Below, piece by piece: positions 40,286 to 51,541 of a DNA stretch of 64,000 nt (the first letter of the stretch is position 1; each line of letters opens with the position of its first letter). The stretch covers positions 4,106,644 through 4,170,643 of the forward strand of contig NC_068999.1 in NCBI RefSeq assembly GCF_001194135.2, written 5' to 3'. The notes beneath the pieces are model-generated. The model was given only the letters and a program-made list of their open reading frames with translations. It ran no database searches and was not told the origin of the DNA. This stretch comes from Octopus bimaculoides (taxonomy: Eukaryota). The position numbers were made by a program, and so were the translations under genes.

Positions 40286-40369
40286 AAGAGAAAAACATTG
40301 CGCCAATCATGGCGGCAGATGAAAGACTTGAAGACTCTTAACATGGCACCATCCGATGATGCCAATGTG
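40286..40369 (+). CDS. GRIN1: GluN1 probable alternative exon 17 (KRKTLRQSWRQMKDLKTLNMAPSDDANV)
   Basis: ctgttctttgcAG acceptor; KRKTLR continues WRGNIE as in protostome NR1 (Drosophila WRGTIEKRKTIR). Probable donor GTG|GTAATG gives 84 nt, phase 0/0; the 3' boundary is less certain than the 5'. Confidence 0.75.
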
Positions 40370-40407
40370 GTAATGTGGTGCAACATATACATACATATAT
40401 ACATTCC

Positions 40408-40439
<32 letters not shown>

Positions 40440-40783
40440 ATATATATATANNNNNNNNNNNNNNNNNNNNNNNNNNNNNNNNNNNNNNNNNNNNNNNNNN
40501 NNNNNNNNNNNNNNNNNNNNNNNNNNNNNNNNNNNNNNNNNNNNNNNNNNNNNNNNNNNNNNNNNNNNNNNNNNNNNNNNNNNNNNNNNNNNNNNNNNNN
40601 NNNNNNNNNNNNNNNNNNNNNNNNNNNNNNNNNNNNNNNNNNNNNNNNNNNNNNNNNNNNNNNNNNNNNNNNNNNNNNNNNNNNNNNNNNNNNNNNNNNN
40701 NNNNNNNNNNNNNNNNNNNNNNNNNNNNNNNNNNNNNNNNNNNNNNNNNNNNNNNNNNNNNNNNNNNNNNNNNNNNNNNNNNN

Positions 40784-40849
<66 letters not shown>

Positions 40850-41710
40850 TGTGTGTGTGTGTGGGGGTAATGTACATGTTTTTGTAAGAATGTGAGGAAG
40901 ATTTCTTTCAGCTTACATGCTTGTCTTTGATTCTCTGTTGGTACACTGTATGAAACCTAAGGTATGGACAAAAGATGTTACCTGTTACTACAAACACAAA
41001 TTTACATTCATTTACTAACATCATCATCATCATCATCATCATCTGTTTTCTATGCTGGCATGATTTGGATGGTTTGACTGGCATATAAAATCTATGCTCT
41101 ATACACTCTTCCACTATAACTGGATATTGAATACTGTTTTTCTATGAAAGGATAAACACTATGTAAATGTAGGCACATATGACTGAAAATTATATCTCAC
41201 AATAGCTGTCCATTCTTTAGTGATGGTCAAGGCCAGCAGTGCTTTTGTAGTGTAGACATAGTGTCAGGAGTTATTTCCCCTCAGCTAAGTGGTGCCATTT
41301 GAGTGGTAACAGCTGCCTGTGTGAGTGCAGGTTAATACTGATAGCAACATTGAACTAGATGATGATAATGATGATGATGACAACGACGACAAAAGTAGAC
41401 AGTAAGAAATAATAATTGTCTGAAAACAAACAAAACAAATGTCCACAATCCCTCCCCCCTCCACACTAACAATTGTGAAACATCATAATGGAGACAATAA
41501 TCAATATGGAGTAGGGGGGGGGGAATGCTGTATTCAGTGTGAAGTAGTTTATGGAAGTATGTGATACATATGGTGACTCATGAGGTTATATAATGTCTGT
41601 GTCCCATGTTGGTTCAAAAACCAAGCCTAGCCTTTGCCAGAAGATGAGCTGACCTTCACACAAAGCCTTTTTTTTTTGTTATTATATGGCCCTGTGAAGT
41701 GTTCTGTTAA

Positions 41711-41933
41711 CCCTTTTGCTACCGTATTTCTGTTGAGATGCTCTATGTTTCTTTCAATTAATTTTAAATATAACAAAGAATTTAGTTAGATAACTTGGTC
41801 ATAATTCAGCTAATGTTAGGAACATAAATTGTGACTAAGGTTTGGAGGAAGATTTTAATTCAAAACTTATGAAAACAAGACATTTGTACTGCAGAGCCAG
41901 AACCGGTTTCAGCCGTTTTTGGTAACAAAAGGA
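41711..41933. mobile_element. piggyBac-type MITE (about 223 bp)
   Basis: TTAA-CCCTTT...AAAGGA-TTAA; reverse complement of 47957-48182. Confidence 0.85.
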
Positions 41934-42302
41934 TTAAGTAATGAAGAATTATATACATTTTACTTCCAGTATTGAGTACATTTTTTTCTCAAATTCATCA
42001 TCACTAACATAACATGTGTGTGTGTGTGTGTGGAGAATTATTCATACATACCCACATGTTCAAGGATATACACACACACACGCAAACAGCCCCACAAAAG
42101 TAAATGCGCCTAAACATACAAATGTTTGTGTGATTGTGCATGCATGTATGTATATGTATGTATATGTATGTATATATTATTAGGAAAAGTTCATCTGCCA
42201 AAGTCTTTAAGTTGGTTTGGTTTCCTAAATTTTCTCACTGGCTGATTCTGCTCTTCTTCTTCTTCTTCTTTGGTAACTTCTAAAATTTACAATTTTTCCC
42301 AC

Positions 42303-42333
<31 letters not shown>

Positions 42334-43585
42334 AATAATTTGGTCCTTACACGACATTGCACAAGGTTTGCTGCACTTTCTTCTAATTTTTCTTCCTCTA
42401 TCTTCTTTCTTTAACTTATATTTCAATTTGAACTCTTTAAGTATTGCAACAGTTCCAAGCAGTCGTTATTGGCACCAACTTCTGTCCCCCCCCCACCCCT
42501 TGTTTACCAGTTAGCATTCATAATTCTAATGTTTTTGCATAGTCTTCCATTCTTTTACTGGTTTAAGGGCATTCAGCTGTGGCCATGCTGGGGCATCACC
42601 TTTCTAAGAGGCAATCAATTATATTGATCTCAGATCTTATTCTATAAACCTTAAAACAATGACAAGTCGAGGGGACCTGGGCAGGATTTGAACTTGGAAT
42701 GTCAAGTGACATAACCAACTTCCACAAGATACTTCTGTTGCTCAACGCTTTACCAATTCCGCCTGATATTTTGTCATACAGGGTATGACAGAAAAACCTC
42801 CCTTAAATACAAAGCCATTGCTGTGGTATTAGGAAAGAGAGTAATCATGCTTTTATGGAGGTAATGTTTGGTCATTTTTTTTTTTAGATATAATTTAAAC
42901 TGGTGCGAGTTGTGTGTCTGTTGATGAAGCGGTTATCAAAAATGGTGAATATGGGAGGTTTTTTTTTCTTTTGGCAGCATCCTGTATTTATATAGAAAAG
43001 TAGAGTATCTTGTCTAAGGTTTAACTGCACCATTGTAGTCATATAGAGACAACAAAAATAAACAAACAAAAACAAATGAAGGTTAAAACGTGACTTCCTG
43101 TGTGGTTTTGTGAGTCTGACTGCTTCACAAGTTTACAAATCAACGACAAGGCTGTGGTTTTTCCTGTTTGAACAAATGGCAAGGTTTTGTGTTTCTCATT
43201 TGAATGTTAAAGGGTTAGAACAGGTCAGACGCATTTAAAATAAAAATAAAAAGATTAGGTTTAATCCTTAAAATAAGTTCATCTCAACTCATTTTAAAAT
43301 AGACGCCTCCGTGTGTCTTTGAGGGAATTTTTTGTTAGTCAGGAACTCCAGCTGATCATGTGATGGGAATCACTTGATTTTGAACTTTTAACCCTCCGTG
43401 TCAGATGCCAGCCGTTGGTATTTCACTGCATTTGGGAAAAGTCATTCAGACAGCTTCTCTTGGGTCTTTCTAGAGATACGAAACTGATTTAGAGAGGTGG
43501 AATGTCTGGTGTTCATACCTTTCCCAATGATATTAATTAGTGGCATGATTACTGACCTAATTAGTGACATAATATATATCATTGT

Positions 43586-43870
43586 GAAGGCGCATGGTTC
43601 AGTGGTTAGAGCATCGGGCTCACAATCATGAGGTAGTGAGTTCGATTCCCAGACCAGGCTGTGTGTTGTGTTCTTGAGCAAGACACTTTATTTCACATTA
43701 CTCCAGTTCACTCAGCTGTAGAAATGAGTTGCGACATCACTGGTGCCAAGATGTATCGGCCCCTTTGCCTTTCCCTTGGGTAACATCTGTGGCATGGAGA
43801 GGAGGAGGCTGGTATCCACAGGCGACTGCTGGCCTTCCTTAAACAACCTCGCCCAGACTTGTGCCTCAAA
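43586..43870 (+). mobile_element. SINE family C variant
   Basis: gaaggcgcatggttcagtggttagagcatcgggctcac...gagttcgattccc head; ttgagcaagacactttatttcac...cagctgtagaaatgagt core. Confidence 0.85.
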
Positions 43871-49586: not shown

Positions 49587-49635
<49 letters not shown>

Positions 49636-50317
49636 CACATACATACATAAGTATAAACACAAGCATATGTATTTGCGCACACACACACACGCAAGCATTT
49701 CTCTCTTTCTCCTTCTTTCTCCCCTACTACCACTACTACCACCACCACCACCACCACCACAAACCCACCCACTCTCACCTAATAGTCACTCTCAGACAAG
49801 TTGTGTATATGCTTGTTTACATATATGTAGGCCAGTGTGTATATTTTGGAAAGGAAATGTTAAGTGCACTCTCACCACGACCACCACCCACTACACTCAT
49901 AAATTGTCCTTAATTATCAACAAATTCTCCGTATAACTACAGACGCATGTACACACGTTTTTATAATTCTTCTGTACGTGTGTGTATATAACACAGAACT
50001 AAATGTCTATGACATATTTTCCTGTATATGTTATCAACGCATATATACATACATGGATATGTATTAATAAACGCATTTTGTGCAGGTGTGTGTATATACA
50101 TATGCATGCGAAATGTGGCAGTCTGTAGGTTGCAACAATGGAACAGCCTGTTTGTGAAATTAATGTGGAAGTGCTTGAGTATTCCACAGACACACGTACC
50201 CTTAACCCAGTTCTCCCTTACATACACATCATCGTCAATTGACGTCCGCCTTCCACGCTGGCCTGGGTTGGACGGTTTGTCAGGAACTGGCCAGGCAGAC
50301 GACTGCACCAAATATAA

Positions 50318-50369
<52 letters not shown>

Positions 50370-50437
50370 AGACACATTACGCAAGCACACACATATACAC
50401 ACAGTACACACACATACAGGCACATGCTTACATGAGT

Positions 50438-50514
<77 letters not shown>

Positions 50515-50570
50515 ATAAACTCGACATCCTTCAAATAAAAAGGTGCATAAAGGCTTATATTTTTATACAG

Positions 50571-50714
50571 CAGGAGTGGCTGTGAGGTTAAGAAGTTTGC
50601 TTCCCAACCACATGGTTTCAAGTTCAGTCCCACTGTGCTGCACCTTGGGCAAGTGTTGTCTACAGAAGTTTTAGGCCAACCAAAGCTTTATGAGTAGATT
50701 TGAAAGAAGCCCAT

Positions 50715-50718
<4 letters not shown>
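50571..50718 (+). mobile_element. SINE family A, 5' part
   Basis: caggagtggctgtgaggttaagaagtttgcttcccaaccacatgg head. Confidence 0.85.
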
Positions 50719-50752
<34 letters not shown>

Positions 50753-51166
50753 ATATAAAAAAAGATTTTTTTATGTTTGTTTATATTTATTCACATGTGT
50801 TGTTTAATTAGCTATTTAGCATCTTGATCAACAGATAAATTTGTCAATGTGCTGTTTAGCTTAATGGTAAAGCATTCAACTGGAGTCTTGGGGGGATGTG
50901 AGTTCAAATTTCATGGCTGGTTGTTGACAAATTTTTCCACCTTTTTTTTTTAACCCAGTATTTCTGCTATTCTGATGGCAATTCTACGTTTGATAAAGTA
51001 TCTTCTTGTTTGCATCGTACAATACGCATTTCAACGCTTGTAATAAAACAAATGTTACTTTGTTTTTTTATATATATATATACATATATATACTTTGTGT
51101 AAGTACCACACATATATACATTTTCTTTGTTGTTTGTTAATGACAAATTGTTCCTTTATATTGCAG

Positions 51167-51541
51167 AAGCGAAGAACTCTTCGACAGACCCTTCAGAAAC
51201 AGCGAGAAGCTGAACAGAAACTGAGTCAGTTTTCGAAAATGACGCCAATCACAACTCCAACGTCAATGAATCCTACAGCCCTATCAGTAGGGACTCCAGC
51301 TGGGGTGATAGTGGGAGGAATGAGCCAGACACACCCGACCCCACCGAAGCCTGCCGTCCTCCTACAGCGGGGCAACAGCCAGACCTGTGGAGCACCATAT
51401 CCAAGCGATGCCGAGACTATGGGAAACGTAACCGGGAGTAGTCGTCCAGTCACGCCAGGTCCCGAAGCATCTGTGCCAACGTATCCAATGGTTACTGATG
51501 GCACCTATGCCAACCCGGCGCATTTAGACGACATTCTATAA
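51167..51541 (+). CDS. GRIN1: GluN1 terminal coding exon 18 (KRRTLRQTLQKQRE...NPAHLDDIL*)
   Basis: ttcctttatattgcAG acceptor, phase 0; 124 codons of non-repetitive sequence to TAA at 51539-51541; starts with KRRTLRQ. Confidence 0.9.
   Translation, partial: KRRTLRQTLQKQREAEQKLSQFSKMTPITTPTSMNPTALSVGTPAGVIVGGMSQTHPTPPKPAVLLQRGNSQTCGAPYPSDAETMGNVTGSSRPVTPGPEASVPTYPMVTDGTYANPAHLDDIL

What the first reader, a model, noticed from the sequence alone, without database searches (positions are those of the whole stretch)
40286..51541. Duplicated C-terminal exons give GluN1 a C1-like cassette at the vertebrate C0|C1 junction
Seen: two exons 11 kb apart both start tgcAG-K-R-K/R-T-L-R-Q (AAGAGAAAAACATTGCGCCAA versus AAGCGAAGAACTCTTCGACAG). 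Of the 7 differences in 21 nt, 6 leave the protein unchanged and 1 is K/R, the signature of an old duplication kept under protein-level selection. The preceding phase-0 intron (WRGNIE|KR) matches the vertebrate WRKNLQ|DRK boundary, where the C1 cassette carrying ER-retention basic triplets and PKC/PKA sites is spliced (established). Inference: either exon 17 is an 84-nt cassette that doubles the basic triplet and the T-x-R PKC motif (988 versus 1016 aa), or 17 and 18 are mutually exclusive C-termini with exon 17 continuing into the adjacent gap (40451-40783). Either way this looks like a convergent, duplication-derived splice switch for NMDA receptor trafficking. A (UG)n tract at 40785-40862, a CELF/TDP-43-type element, lies downstream.
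Basis: partly seen in the sequence, partly recalled or inferred. Interest (0 to 1): 0.8.

Follow-up and report, generated by a model that had tools for sequence, protein, structure and literature searches.

The report
Octopus GluN1 alternative C-terminal cassette exon
The 84-base "exon 17" is a real, already annotated alternative exon of the octopus NMDA-receptor GluN1 gene; it is an ancient copy of the start of the last exon, shared with snails, oysters and brachiopods, so it is interesting for evolution but not a new discovery.

Summary
Two exons, at 40286-40369 and from 51167, both start KR(K/R)TLRQ. The motif occurs nowhere else in the window (0.03 expected by chance).

The window is Octopus bimaculoides GluN1. 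An exact look-up shows both predicted products are already RefSeq isoforms:
- X1, 1016 aa, exon 17 included.
- X2, 988 aa, exon 17 skipped.
- O. sinensis has the same pair.

So the cassette reading is right, but it is already annotated.

The exon pair is far older than cephalopods. Lingula, Crassostrea, Plakobranchus and an unidentified ENA metagenome contig all show the order C0 exon, then a KRKxLRxxW exon, then a KRRTLRQTLQKQ terminal exon.
- Oyster, mussel and Aplysia have isoforms with the KRK-type sequence as a short alternative tail. In Aplysia (Grin1-2) this is apparently a frame-shifting cassette.
- In octopus and Lingula the exon is in frame.

- The "C1-like" function: there is no RxR motif, and the Thr is not conserved among orthologues.
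- The (UG)n element: it is a variable microsatellite, (TG)30 here and (TG)8 in O. sinensis.

The assembly gap lies in the intron. It is collinear with gap-free O. sinensis sequence.

The parts
28964..29109 (+). GluN1 exon 16: transmembrane helix M4 plus the calmodulin-binding C0 segment. Ends ...RWRGNIE in phase 0.
   Evidence: Translation. PF10562 CaM_bdg_C0 matches its full profile (1-29 of 29) and ends at the exon end, E=3.5e-13. 98.6% identical to O. sinensis with 0 amino-acid changes.
40236..40285 (+). Polypyrimidine tract and acceptor of exon 17 (…gatctgttctttgcag). It is the best conserved intron flank of the seven exons compared.
   Evidence: 100% identical over 50 nt and 95% over 100 nt to O. 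sinensis. The other six exons score 67-92% and 78-91%.
40286..40369 (+). Exon 17: 84-nt phase-0/phase-0 alternative cassette encoding KRKTLRQSWRQMKDLKTLNMAPSDDANV.
   Evidence: Included in XP_014790759.1 (X1, 1016 aa) and skipped in XP_014790760.1 (X2, 988 aa). A profile built from 7 non-octopus e17-type exons finds only this ORF in the window (15.1 bits, E=0.0036; next best 6.2 bits). O. sinensis orthologue at L013:63069-63152.
40370..40375 (+). Exon 17 donor, GTG|gtaatg.
   Evidence: Identical in O. sinensis. Its use is implied by isoform X1 in two species.
40408..40862 (.). Intronic (TA)n, assembly gap (40451-40783) and (TG)30 microsatellite block downstream of exon 17.
   Evidence: The O. 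sinensis equivalent is about 250 nt of unique sequence plus (TG)8, collinear on both sides.
51167..51541 (+). Exon 18: terminal coding exon. Encodes KRRTLRQTLQKQRE… and a Ser/Thr/Pro-rich tail ending -HLDDIL. Stop codon at 51539-51541.
   Evidence: Translation. The e18-type profile from 9 other species gives 26.7 bits, E=1e-6. 96.3% identical to O. sinensis, with 9 synonymous and 2 non-synonymous codon changes.
52245..52250 (+). First AATAAA downstream of the exon 18 stop, a candidate poly(A) signal.
   Evidence: Pattern scan. None occurs in the 2.2 kb of read sequence after exon 17, where 2.6 are expected.

Best explanation
The window holds the Octopus bimaculoides GluN1 (GRIN1-type NMDA receptor subunit) gene. 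Exon 17 (40286-40369) is a genuine, alternatively spliced, in-frame cassette exon lying between the M4/C0 exon and the terminal exon.

Shown:
- Inclusion gives the 1016-aa isoform and skipping gives the 988-aa isoform.
- The exon is the octopus orthologue of an old lophotrochozoan exon type (KRKxLRxxW...). This type always lies between the C0 exon and the KRRTLRQTLQKQ... terminal exon.

Inferred:
- The exon arose by tandem duplication of the 5' part of the terminal exon before molluscs and brachiopods diverged.
- Inclusion lengthens the membrane-proximal C0 helix by about 19 basic, amphipathic residues with a conserved Trp. It then adds a short acidic linker, so the conserved basic motif occurs twice before the distal tail.
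- This most likely alters membrane-proximal protein or lipid interactions (calmodulin or alpha-actinin type), or the spacing of the distal tail. It probably does not act as an ER-retention or PKC switch.
- In Aplysia the orthologous exon is a cassette that shifts the frame. Oyster and mussel annotations give the e17-type sequence as a short alternative ending, and the sea-slug model ends there. In these species the exon replaces the long tail with a short one.
- Octopus and Lingula keep the long tail.
For: Annotation and identity:
- The exact 1016-aa and 988-aa sequences are XP_014790759.1 (X1) and XP_014790760.1 (X2). O. sinensis has X1 at 1016 aa and X2 at 988 aa. O. vulgaris has a 988-aa model.
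- The 1016-aa form is the Grin1_Octopus sequence used in PMC5225553.

Conserved three-exon architecture:
- Lingula: a 66-nt in-frame exon, included in XP_013416499.1.
- Crassostrea virginica: X1 960 aa versus X2 898 aa.
- Mytilus: a pair of gene models.
- Plakobranchus.
- An unidentified ENA contig, L007.
- Transcripts L003 and L006.

Orthology:
- Type-specific profiles built without octopus each pick out their own exon. Cross-scores are only 2.5-2.9 bits.

Aplysia:
- Grin1-2 ends KRKKLRATWQYLHALKDTNEIDLKSEEP.
- Its qPCR forward primer lies in that exon, and it shares a reverse primer located in exon-18-type sequence.

Conservation with O. sinensis:
- Splice sites are identical and the upstream flank is the most conserved of seven exons.

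Structure:
- AlphaFold2 on the C0 plus e17 alignment gives one helix through e17 residue 19, with pLDDT above 90 for the first 30 residues.
Against: - No transcript reads were examined here. The RefSeq isoforms are computational models, and tissue regulation is unknown.
- The distal half of exon 17 changes fast between two Octopus species: 3 of 4 changed codons are non-synonymous, against 2 of 11 in exon 18. Only the first roughly 10 residues look constrained.
- Similarity between exons 17 and 18 is limited to 7-9 residues, so duplication is the parsimonious reading rather than a proven one.
- The helix prediction is for an isolated 45-residue peptide with a 6-sequence alignment.
- The functional statement is inference only. 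The hydrophobic moments of the two exon types overlap.
Confidence: 0.85

Rival explanations
1. Exon 17 is an alternative last exon in octopus. It would be mutually exclusive with exon 18: the transcript reads through the gtaatg site to a stop and poly(A) site, giving a short-tailed receptor as in bivalves and sea slugs.
For: - The e17-type exon carries its own in-frame stop in Crassostrea, Plakobranchus and L007 genomic DNA and in the L006 transcript, and the Mytilus protein model ends there.
- In O. sinensis, read-through reaches TAA after 19 codons, and an ATTAAA lies 98 nt downstream.
- In the window the read-through frame is open up to the gap.
Against: - RefSeq X1 in two Octopus species joins exon 17 to exon 18 in frame.
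- The donor is intact and identical in both species.
- The read-through peptide (VMWCNIYIHIYIPIYIYI...) is microsatellite-derived.
- There is no AATAAA or ATTAAA in 2.2 kb of read sequence after exon 17 in the window, where 2.6 are expected.
- No such isoform is in the protein cluster.
Confidence: 0.07
2. One reading: exon 17 is a convergent analogue of the vertebrate C1 cassette. It would act as a trafficking and phosphorylation switch by doubling an ER-retention basic triplet and a T-x-R PKC site.
For: - It sits at the same phase-0 junction after C0 as C1.
- It is a symmetric cassette (84 nt; C1 is 111 nt from my own knowledge).
- It has a basic start with Thr followed by x-Arg.
Against: - There is no R-x-R or RRR in exon 17 (KRKTLRQSWRQMK...).
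- Thr4 is not conserved in orthologous e17-type exons. It is L in oyster, K in mussel, sea slug and Aplysia, Q in L006, Y in L007 and M in P0023.
- The same motif is present in both isoforms at the start of exon 18, so inclusion adds no new kind of signal.
- There is no Ser cluster comparable to the S890/S896/S897 sites of vertebrate C1 (those sites from my own knowledge).
- The most conserved residue is a Trp, which fits a helix face better than a kinase site.
Confidence: 0.12
3. The shared KR(K/R)TLRQ start reflects convergence on a functional membrane-proximal motif, for example exonisation of intronic sequence shaped by selection, rather than tandem exon duplication.
For: - Similarity is confined to 7-9 residues.
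- Type-specific profiles cross-score at only 2.5-2.9 bits.
- Nucleotide identity is 14 of 21, which is uninformative at this age.
Against: - Both exons have the same phase, the same position directly after the same upstream exon, and the same order in four genomes from two phyla.
- The single post-C0 exon of arthropods (KRKTLRAS..QRR) and hemichordates (RRRTIRQTLLNRAQQ) combines features of both types, as expected of the ancestor.
Confidence: 0.12
4. Exon 17 is a non-functional pseudo-exon or an artefact of gene prediction.
For: - No reads were inspected here.
- Its distal half evolves quickly between Octopus species.
Against: - The ORF and both splice sites are intact in two species.
- The exon is 95% identical between species, against about 85% for the 300 nt of upstream intron.
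- It differs from the Lingula exon at only one of the first 10 residues (KRKTLRQSWR versus KRKTLRASWA...).
- The orthologous exon is in cloned or assembled transcripts of Aplysia and other species.
Confidence: 0.03

Closest known systems
RefSeq isoforms X1/X2 of GluN1 in Octopus bimaculoides (XP_014790759.1, XP_014790760.1) and O. sinensis (XP_029648108.1, XP_029648109.1)
   Same: This is the same object. My 1016-aa (exon 17 in) and 988-aa (exon 17 out) constructs match these entries residue for residue.
   Different: The annotation records only two products. It does not note the paralogy with exon 18, the deep orthology, or any function.
Aplysia californica Grin1-1 / Grin1-2 (AcNR1-1/-2; Ha et al. 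2006 as cited in PMC5225553; qPCR in PMC5225553), and the oyster and mussel isoform pairs
   Same: - The orthologous exon has the same position after RWRGNIE and the same KRKxLRxxW signature.
- It is alternatively used.
- Both Aplysia variants are expressed in all ganglia, and Grin1-2 dominates in the buccal ganglion.
   Different: - In Aplysia, inclusion ends the protein. The tail ...DLKSEEP* fits exon 18 (AAG CGA AGA ACC CTG A..) read in the +1 frame, which implies a 71-nt frame-shifting cassette. This is my inference.
- In oyster, sea slug and L007 the exon has its own stop, and the mussel model ends there.
- In octopus and Lingula it is in frame and the long tail is kept.
Vertebrate GRIN1 C-terminal splicing (C1 cassette, exon 21; C2/C2' alternative ends)
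   Same: - It uses the same phase-0 intron at the end of C0.
- The cassette is a multiple of 3 nt.
- Vertebrate C1 starts DRKSGR, against KRKTLR here (xRK[ST]xR).
- Functionally, the Aplysia, oyster and mussel versions resemble the C2/C2' choice, in which the distal C-terminus is present or absent.
   Different: - There is no detectable homology beyond six residues.
- There is no RRR retention signal and no PKC/PKA Ser cluster.
- The paralogous exon pair was not seen in the arthropod, hemichordate or vertebrate sequences sampled.
Tandem exon duplication as a source of alternative splicing (general phenomenon; Kondrashov & Koonin 2001 and Letunic et al. 2002, from my own knowledge)
   Same: The two exons are adjacent, share the same phase and similar starts, and one is used alternatively.
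   Different: - The copies are very unequal: an 84-nt internal exon against a 375-nt terminal exon.
- In octopus they are not mutually exclusive, since X1 contains both.

Membership tests
GluN1 (NMDA receptor subunit 1) gene | M4 helix followed by the calmodulin-binding C0 segment, with full-length identity to a named GluN1 protein. | tested here: met
   PF10562 full-length hit. tblastn with Lingula and Batillaria GluN1 finds hits along most of the protein, from window 5094 to 51541. The encoded protein is XP_014790759.1.
Lophotrochozoan e17-type alternative exon of GluN1 | Lies between the C0 exon and the KRRTLRQTLQKQ-type terminal exon, with a phase-0 acceptor. | tested here: met
   Window order is 29109 | 40286-40369 | 51167. 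The same order holds in L002, L004, L005 and L013, and L007 shows the C0 exon followed by the e17-type exon.
Lophotrochozoan e17-type alternative exon of GluN1 | Signature KRKxLRxxW (Lys at position 3, Trp at position 9), distinct from the e18-type (Arg at 3, Leu at 9, then QKQRE). | tested here: met
   The profile from 7 other species gives 15.1 bits (E=0.0036) for exon 17 and 2.5 bits for exon 18. The reciprocal test gives 26.7 bits versus 2.9 bits.
Lophotrochozoan e17-type alternative exon of GluN1 | Alternative use: isoforms with and without the exon. | tested here: met
   Database isoforms X1 and X2 exist in two Octopus species. These are annotation models. Read-level evidence was not examined.
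Vertebrate C1 cassette (GRIN1 exon 21) | Symmetric cassette inserted at the C0 junction. | tested here: met
   84 nt, phase 0 at both ends, directly after the C0 profile ends.
Vertebrate C1 cassette (GRIN1 exon 21) | RRR (RxR-type) ER-retention signal. | tested here: not met
   KRKTLRQSWRQMKDLKTLNMAPSDDANV has no R-x-R or RRR. None is conserved in orthologous exons.
Vertebrate C1 cassette (GRIN1 exon 21) | Cluster of PKC/PKA serines next to the retention signal. | tested here: not met
   There is a single Thr in the motif KRKT-L-R, and it is not conserved among e17-type exons (L, K, Q, Y or M at that position).
Vertebrate C1 cassette (GRIN1 exon 21) | Sequence homology to C1. | tested here: inconclusive
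   Only xRK[ST]xR aligns (DRKSGR versus KRKTLR) in the phmmer alignment to human GluN1.
Vertebrate C1 cassette (GRIN1 exon 21) | Second calmodulin-binding site. | not testable with these tools
   Only a predicted basic amphipathic helix is available. A binding assay is needed.
Mutually exclusive tandem-duplicated exons | Similar length, and never both in one mRNA. | tested here: not met
   84 nt versus 375 nt, and isoform X1 contains both.

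The most novel reading that the evidence does not exclude
Alternative splicing immediately after C0 may be ancestral to Bilateria rather than convergent. On this reading the vertebrate C1 cassette (DRKSGR...), the single arthropod and hemichordate [KR]R[KR]T[LI]R exon, and the lophotrochozoan e17/e18 pair all descend from one ancestral post-C0 exon. 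The e17-type exon would then be a >500-Myr-old switch that decides whether GluN1 carries its distal tail. It works by frame-shift or stop in gastropods and bivalves, and was re-tuned to an in-frame insert in cephalopods and brachiopods.
Probability: 0.12. Interest if true: 0.65.

Novelty: already known. Interest (0 to 1): 0.3.

Why it matters
GluN1 C-terminal splicing controls the trafficking and anchoring of NMDA receptors in vertebrates. Cephalopods evolved complex learning independently, so a regulated C-terminal cassette in octopus GluN1 is a natural place to look for parallel or shared mechanisms.

This check shows that the cassette is real but already in RefSeq, and that it is not a cephalopod invention. 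It belongs to an exon pair conserved across molluscs and brachiopods.

The useful new angle is comparative. The same exon truncates the tail in Aplysia, and oyster and mussel annotations give it as a short alternative ending, but it is an in-frame insert in octopus and Lingula. That gives a clean natural experiment for what the distal GluN1 tail and the duplicated basic helix do.

Tried and rejected
- **First homologue searches.** The word-index search with the C-terminal peptide returned no octopus protein and missed Lingula. The representative search and an exact-sequence look-up were needed.
- **Cuttlefish locus L001.** The exon-18 homologue starts at L001:9983, but no exon-17 homologue lies in the 10 kb upstream that could be fetched. 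This is uninformative because the introns are longer there.
- **Failed look-ups.** The look-up of Mytilus P0001 found nothing on record.
- **Literature.** Searches for octopus or invertebrate GluN1 C-terminal splicing found nothing specific beyond PMC5225553. Ha et al. 2006 is not held.
- **PDB sequence search.** It gave only the expected C0 match to vertebrate GluN1.
- **Poly(A) signal argument.** It is weak. Zero were found where 2.6 were expected in the window, but O. sinensis has an ATTAAA 98 nt after exon 17.
- **Hydrophobic-moment comparison.** Values for e17-type (0.34-0.59) and e18-type (0.32-0.42) overlap and are not decisive.
- **Intronic ORFs.** Five were checked against Pfam with no hits.
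- **(UG)n as a specific CELF/TDP-43 element.** I rejected this as evidence. It is the longest (TG)n on this strand, but it is one of 15 such tracts plus 16 (CA)n and 35 (TA)n. It flanks an assembly gap and is only (TG)8 in O. sinensis.

Full report
**1. Observation**

- Exon 16 (28964-29109) encodes M4 and ends ...[10 protein letters not shown], followed by gtcagt.
- Exon 17 (40286-40369) has a good polypyrimidine tract and acceptor (gatctgttctttgcag|AAG) and a donor GTG|gtaatg. It is 84 nt and encodes KRKTLRQSWRQMKDLKTLNMAPSDDANV.
- Exon 18 (51167-51541) starts attgcag|AAG and encodes KRRTLRQTLQKQREAEQKL...HLDDIL*.

The first 21 nt of exons 17 and 18 differ at 7 positions, 6 synonymous and 1 K/R. 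KR[KR].LR occurs only at these two sites in all six frames of the 64-kb window. The mean in 100 dinucleotide-preserving shuffles was 0.03.

Pfam's CaM_bdg_C0 profile (PF10562) matches end to end and stops exactly at the exon 16 boundary. Genomic read-through ORFs from many vertebrates (...VWRKNLQ|V...) and invertebrates (...RWRGNIE|V...) show that the intron sits at the same phase-0 position in both.

**2. The gap**

Gap 40451-40783 begins 81 nt after the exon 17 donor. It lies between a (TA)n and a (TG)n microsatellite. The gap-free O. sinensis orthologue (L013) is collinear on both sides, with about 250 nt in place of the gap. Neither exon and no splice junction depends on unread sequence. 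The other two gaps lie deeper in the same intron.

**3. Identity and annotation status**

The supplementary protein set of PMC5225553 contains a 1016-aa 'Grin1_Octopus' whose C-terminus reads ...RWRGNIE-KRKTLRQSWRQMKDLKTLNMAPSDDANV-KRRTLRQ.... I looked up that sequence, and a version with the 28 residues deleted, by exact match. Both are in the public collection:
- XP_014790759.1, isoform X1, 1016 aa, O. bimaculoides.
- XP_014790760.1, isoform X2, 988 aa, O. bimaculoides.
- XP_029648108.1 (1016 aa) and XP_029648109.1 (988 aa), O. sinensis.
- A 988-aa model from O. vulgaris.

These are computational isoforms. I did not see reads.

**4. Relatives elsewhere**

Searches with the C-terminal peptide and cluster look-ups show two exon types directly after RWRGNIE across Lophotrochozoa.

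The e17-type starts KRKxLRxxW:
- Lingula: KRKTLRASWAVLRKDKADDLDE
- Crassostrea: KRKLLRESWDYIKVLKDK...
- Mytilus: KRKKLRETWDYIRAMKDQ...
- Plakobranchus: KRKKLRETWQYLHALRMD...
- Aplysia Grin1-2: KRKKLRATWQYLHALKDTNEIDL...
- Two Logan transcripts and one unidentified ENA contig

The e18-type starts KRRTLRQTLQ[KR]QR[ED]E. It is seen in Crassostrea, Mytilus, Plakobranchus, Batillaria, Candidula, Bradybaena and Aplysia Grin1-1. The cuttlefish reads KRRTLRMTLQKQRE and Arion reads KRRTLRKNLQKQ, as near variants. Lingula has a more diverged form, KRRMQRSNQLEHEQ.

Genomic loci show the same order everywhere: C0 exon, then e17-type, then e18-type.
- Lingula L002: C0 exon ends at 22269, e17-type at 23742-23807, e18-type from 24212.
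- Oyster L004: 24485, 26475-26603, 29054.
- Sea slug L005: 22925, 26357-26437, 30299.
- L007: only the first two exons lie within the sequence fetched.

Profiles built only from non-octopus sequences each find their own octopus exon as the single significant hit in the six-frame translation of the window. The e17 profile gives 15.1 bits (E=0.0036; next best 6.2 bits). The e18 profile gives 26.7 bits (E=1e-6). Each scores the other exon at only 2.5-2.9 bits. Exon 17 is therefore an orthologue of an exon type that predates the mollusc-brachiopod split.

Arthropods (KRKTLRAS..QRR..NG), hemichordates (RRRTIRQTLLNRAQQ) and other protostomes sampled show only a single such sequence directly after C0. 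A duplication in the lophotrochozoan stem is the simplest history.

**5. How the exon is used in other species**
- Oyster RefSeq has X1 (960 aa, C0|e18-type...DNFV) and X2 (898 aa, C0|e17-type ending ...PDLQHN*).
- Mytilus has the same two endings in two gene models.
- The e17-type exon carries its own stop in oyster, sea slug and L007 genomic DNA and in the L006 transcript.
- In Aplysia, Grin1-2 ends ...DTNEIDLKSEEP.

The Aplysia qPCR primers in PMC5225553 place the Grin1-2 forward primer in the e17-type exon (GACACCAACGAAATAGACCTC, encoding DTNEIDL). Both variants share a reverse primer that lies in e18-type sequence (GCTCCCAATGCAAACACAGC, encoding APNANTA). The tail K-S-E-E-P-stop is what AAG CGA AGA ACC CTG A.. 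(KRRTL.) gives when read one base out of frame.

I infer that the Aplysia exon is a 71-nt cassette whose inclusion shifts the frame of the last exon. The predicted amplicon, about 145 nt, fits the stated 100-150 bp. Both Aplysia variants are expressed in all ganglia, and Grin1-2 is the dominant NMDAR transcript in the buccal ganglion.

Octopus (84 nt) and Lingula (66 nt) have no stop and a length divisible by three. There, inclusion inserts residues and keeps the long tail with its conserved hydrophobic C-terminus: -DDIL in octopus, -DNFV in bivalves, -DHLV/-DNVV/-FSVI in gastropods.

**6. Conservation within Octopus**

Against O. sinensis, exon 17 is 95.2% identical. The acceptor region and donor are identical. 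The 50 nt upstream are 100% identical, against 67-92% for six other exons. Conserved flanks are typical of regulated exons; this is general knowledge.

The peptide differs at 3 of 28 residues (Q11E, N19K, N27D). Exon 16 has none and exon 18 has 2 of 124. Of the changed codons, 1 is synonymous and 3 are non-synonymous in exon 17, against 9 and 2 in exon 18. Constraint therefore sits on the first roughly 10 residues, the reading frame and the splice signals. The distal acidic part is less constrained.

**7. Likely mechanism**

AlphaFold2 on the C0-anchor plus e17-type alignment predicts one continuous helix from C0 through e17 residue 19. pLDDT is above 90 for the first 30 residues, and the last 9 residues are disordered.

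The conserved features are the basic start, Leu5, Trp9 and a hydrophobic residue at position 12. This describes a basic amphipathic face. My best inference is that inclusion extends the membrane-proximal C0 helix and changes its partners or the register of the distal tail.

- There is no RxR motif.
- Thr4 is not conserved among orthologues.
- There is no Ser cluster.
- The same motif opens exon 18 in both isoforms.

**8. The (UG)n tract**

The tract is real: (TG)30 at 40786-40845. However, the window holds 15 (TG)n, 16 (CA)n and 35 (TA)n tracts of at least 8 units. This tract flanks an assembly gap, and it is only (TG)8 in O. sinensis. A role in splicing cannot be excluded, but nothing singles the tract out.

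**9. Comparison with vertebrates**

The junction is homologous, being the same intron. A [KR]R[KR][ST]xR motif after C0 is ancestral to Bilateria. Vertebrate C1 begins DRKSGR, which aligns with KRKTLR, so 'convergent' is not secure for the position or the motif.

The paralogous exon pair, however, was seen only in Lophotrochozoa. The Aplysia, oyster and mussel outcome, with or without the distal tail, resembles the vertebrate C2/C2' choice more than C1.

**10. Verdict**

The feature itself is already in public annotation, and its Aplysia orthologue is a published splice variant.

My searches did not find the following described anywhere: the paralogy of the two exons, their conservation across two phyla, and the contrast between truncating use (Aplysia, and the oyster and mussel annotations) and in-frame use (octopus, Lingula). 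These are modest but testable evolutionary points.

Noticed in passing
PMC5225553 supplementary files 2 and 9 (Aplysia Grin1-2); compare window 51167-51185: The Aplysia Grin1-2 tail ...DLKSEEP* is what KRRTL(R) codons AAG CGA AGA ACC CTG A give when read in the +1 frame. Its qPCR amplicon shares a reverse primer lying in exon-18-type sequence. This implies a 71-nt frame-shifting cassette rather than a separate last exon.
   Followed up: partly
Proteins P0047 (Timema), P0058 (Nymphon), P0201 (Plectropomus): Other lineages also carry extra segments inserted exactly at the C0 junction: 34 aa before EKRKTLR in a stick insect, about 20 aa in a sea spider, and PSSSLETQD before DRKSGR in a fish. The junction may be a recurrent site for alternative exons, or for intron retention in gene models.
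   Followed up: no
P0029 / L002 (Lingula XP_013416499.1): The Lingula RefSeq protein repeats a block of about 110 aa (GVKTHKCCKGYCIDLL...GLTVLMKR) twice in tandem. tblastn maps both copies to the same octopus exons. This is probably an assembly or annotation duplication in Lingula.
   Followed up: no
L006:1-303 (Logan SRR9620657 transcript): This transcript joins the exon encoding ...[21 protein letters not shown] directly to the M4/C0 exon, out of frame, skipping the M1-M3 and S2 exons. It then ends with an e17-type exon plus a 3'UTR. It is either an assembly chimera or a non-productive isoform.
   Followed up: no
window whole; gaps listed, repeats: Dinucleotide microsatellites are very dense: 35 (TA)n, 15 (TG)n and 16 (CA)n tracts of at least 8 units. 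Many of the assembly gaps are flanked by them. This explains the fragmented assembly.
   Followed up: partly
window 29110-51166 versus L013 43879-80832: The two introns around exon 17 are 11.2 and 10.8 kb in the window but 19.2 and 17.7 kb in O. sinensis. Either the gap lengths in the window are underestimated or the two species differ by large insertions.
   Followed up: no
window 51500-51541 and homologous tails: The long tail ends in a short acidic-then-hydrophobic C-terminus across phyla: -DDIL, -DNFV, -DHLV/-DNVV, arthropod -SHLVV/-SHLIV, hemichordate -EHTV, vertebrate C2' -STVV. It looks like a conserved PDZ-type ligand that the short-tail isoforms would lack.
   Followed up: no
L008-L012 (Logan genomic contigs): Another cephalopod-like genome encodes an identical exon 16 peptide with about 14% synonymous DNA divergence and unalignable introns. 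The species was not identified, and its exon 17 could not be reached.
   Followed up: no
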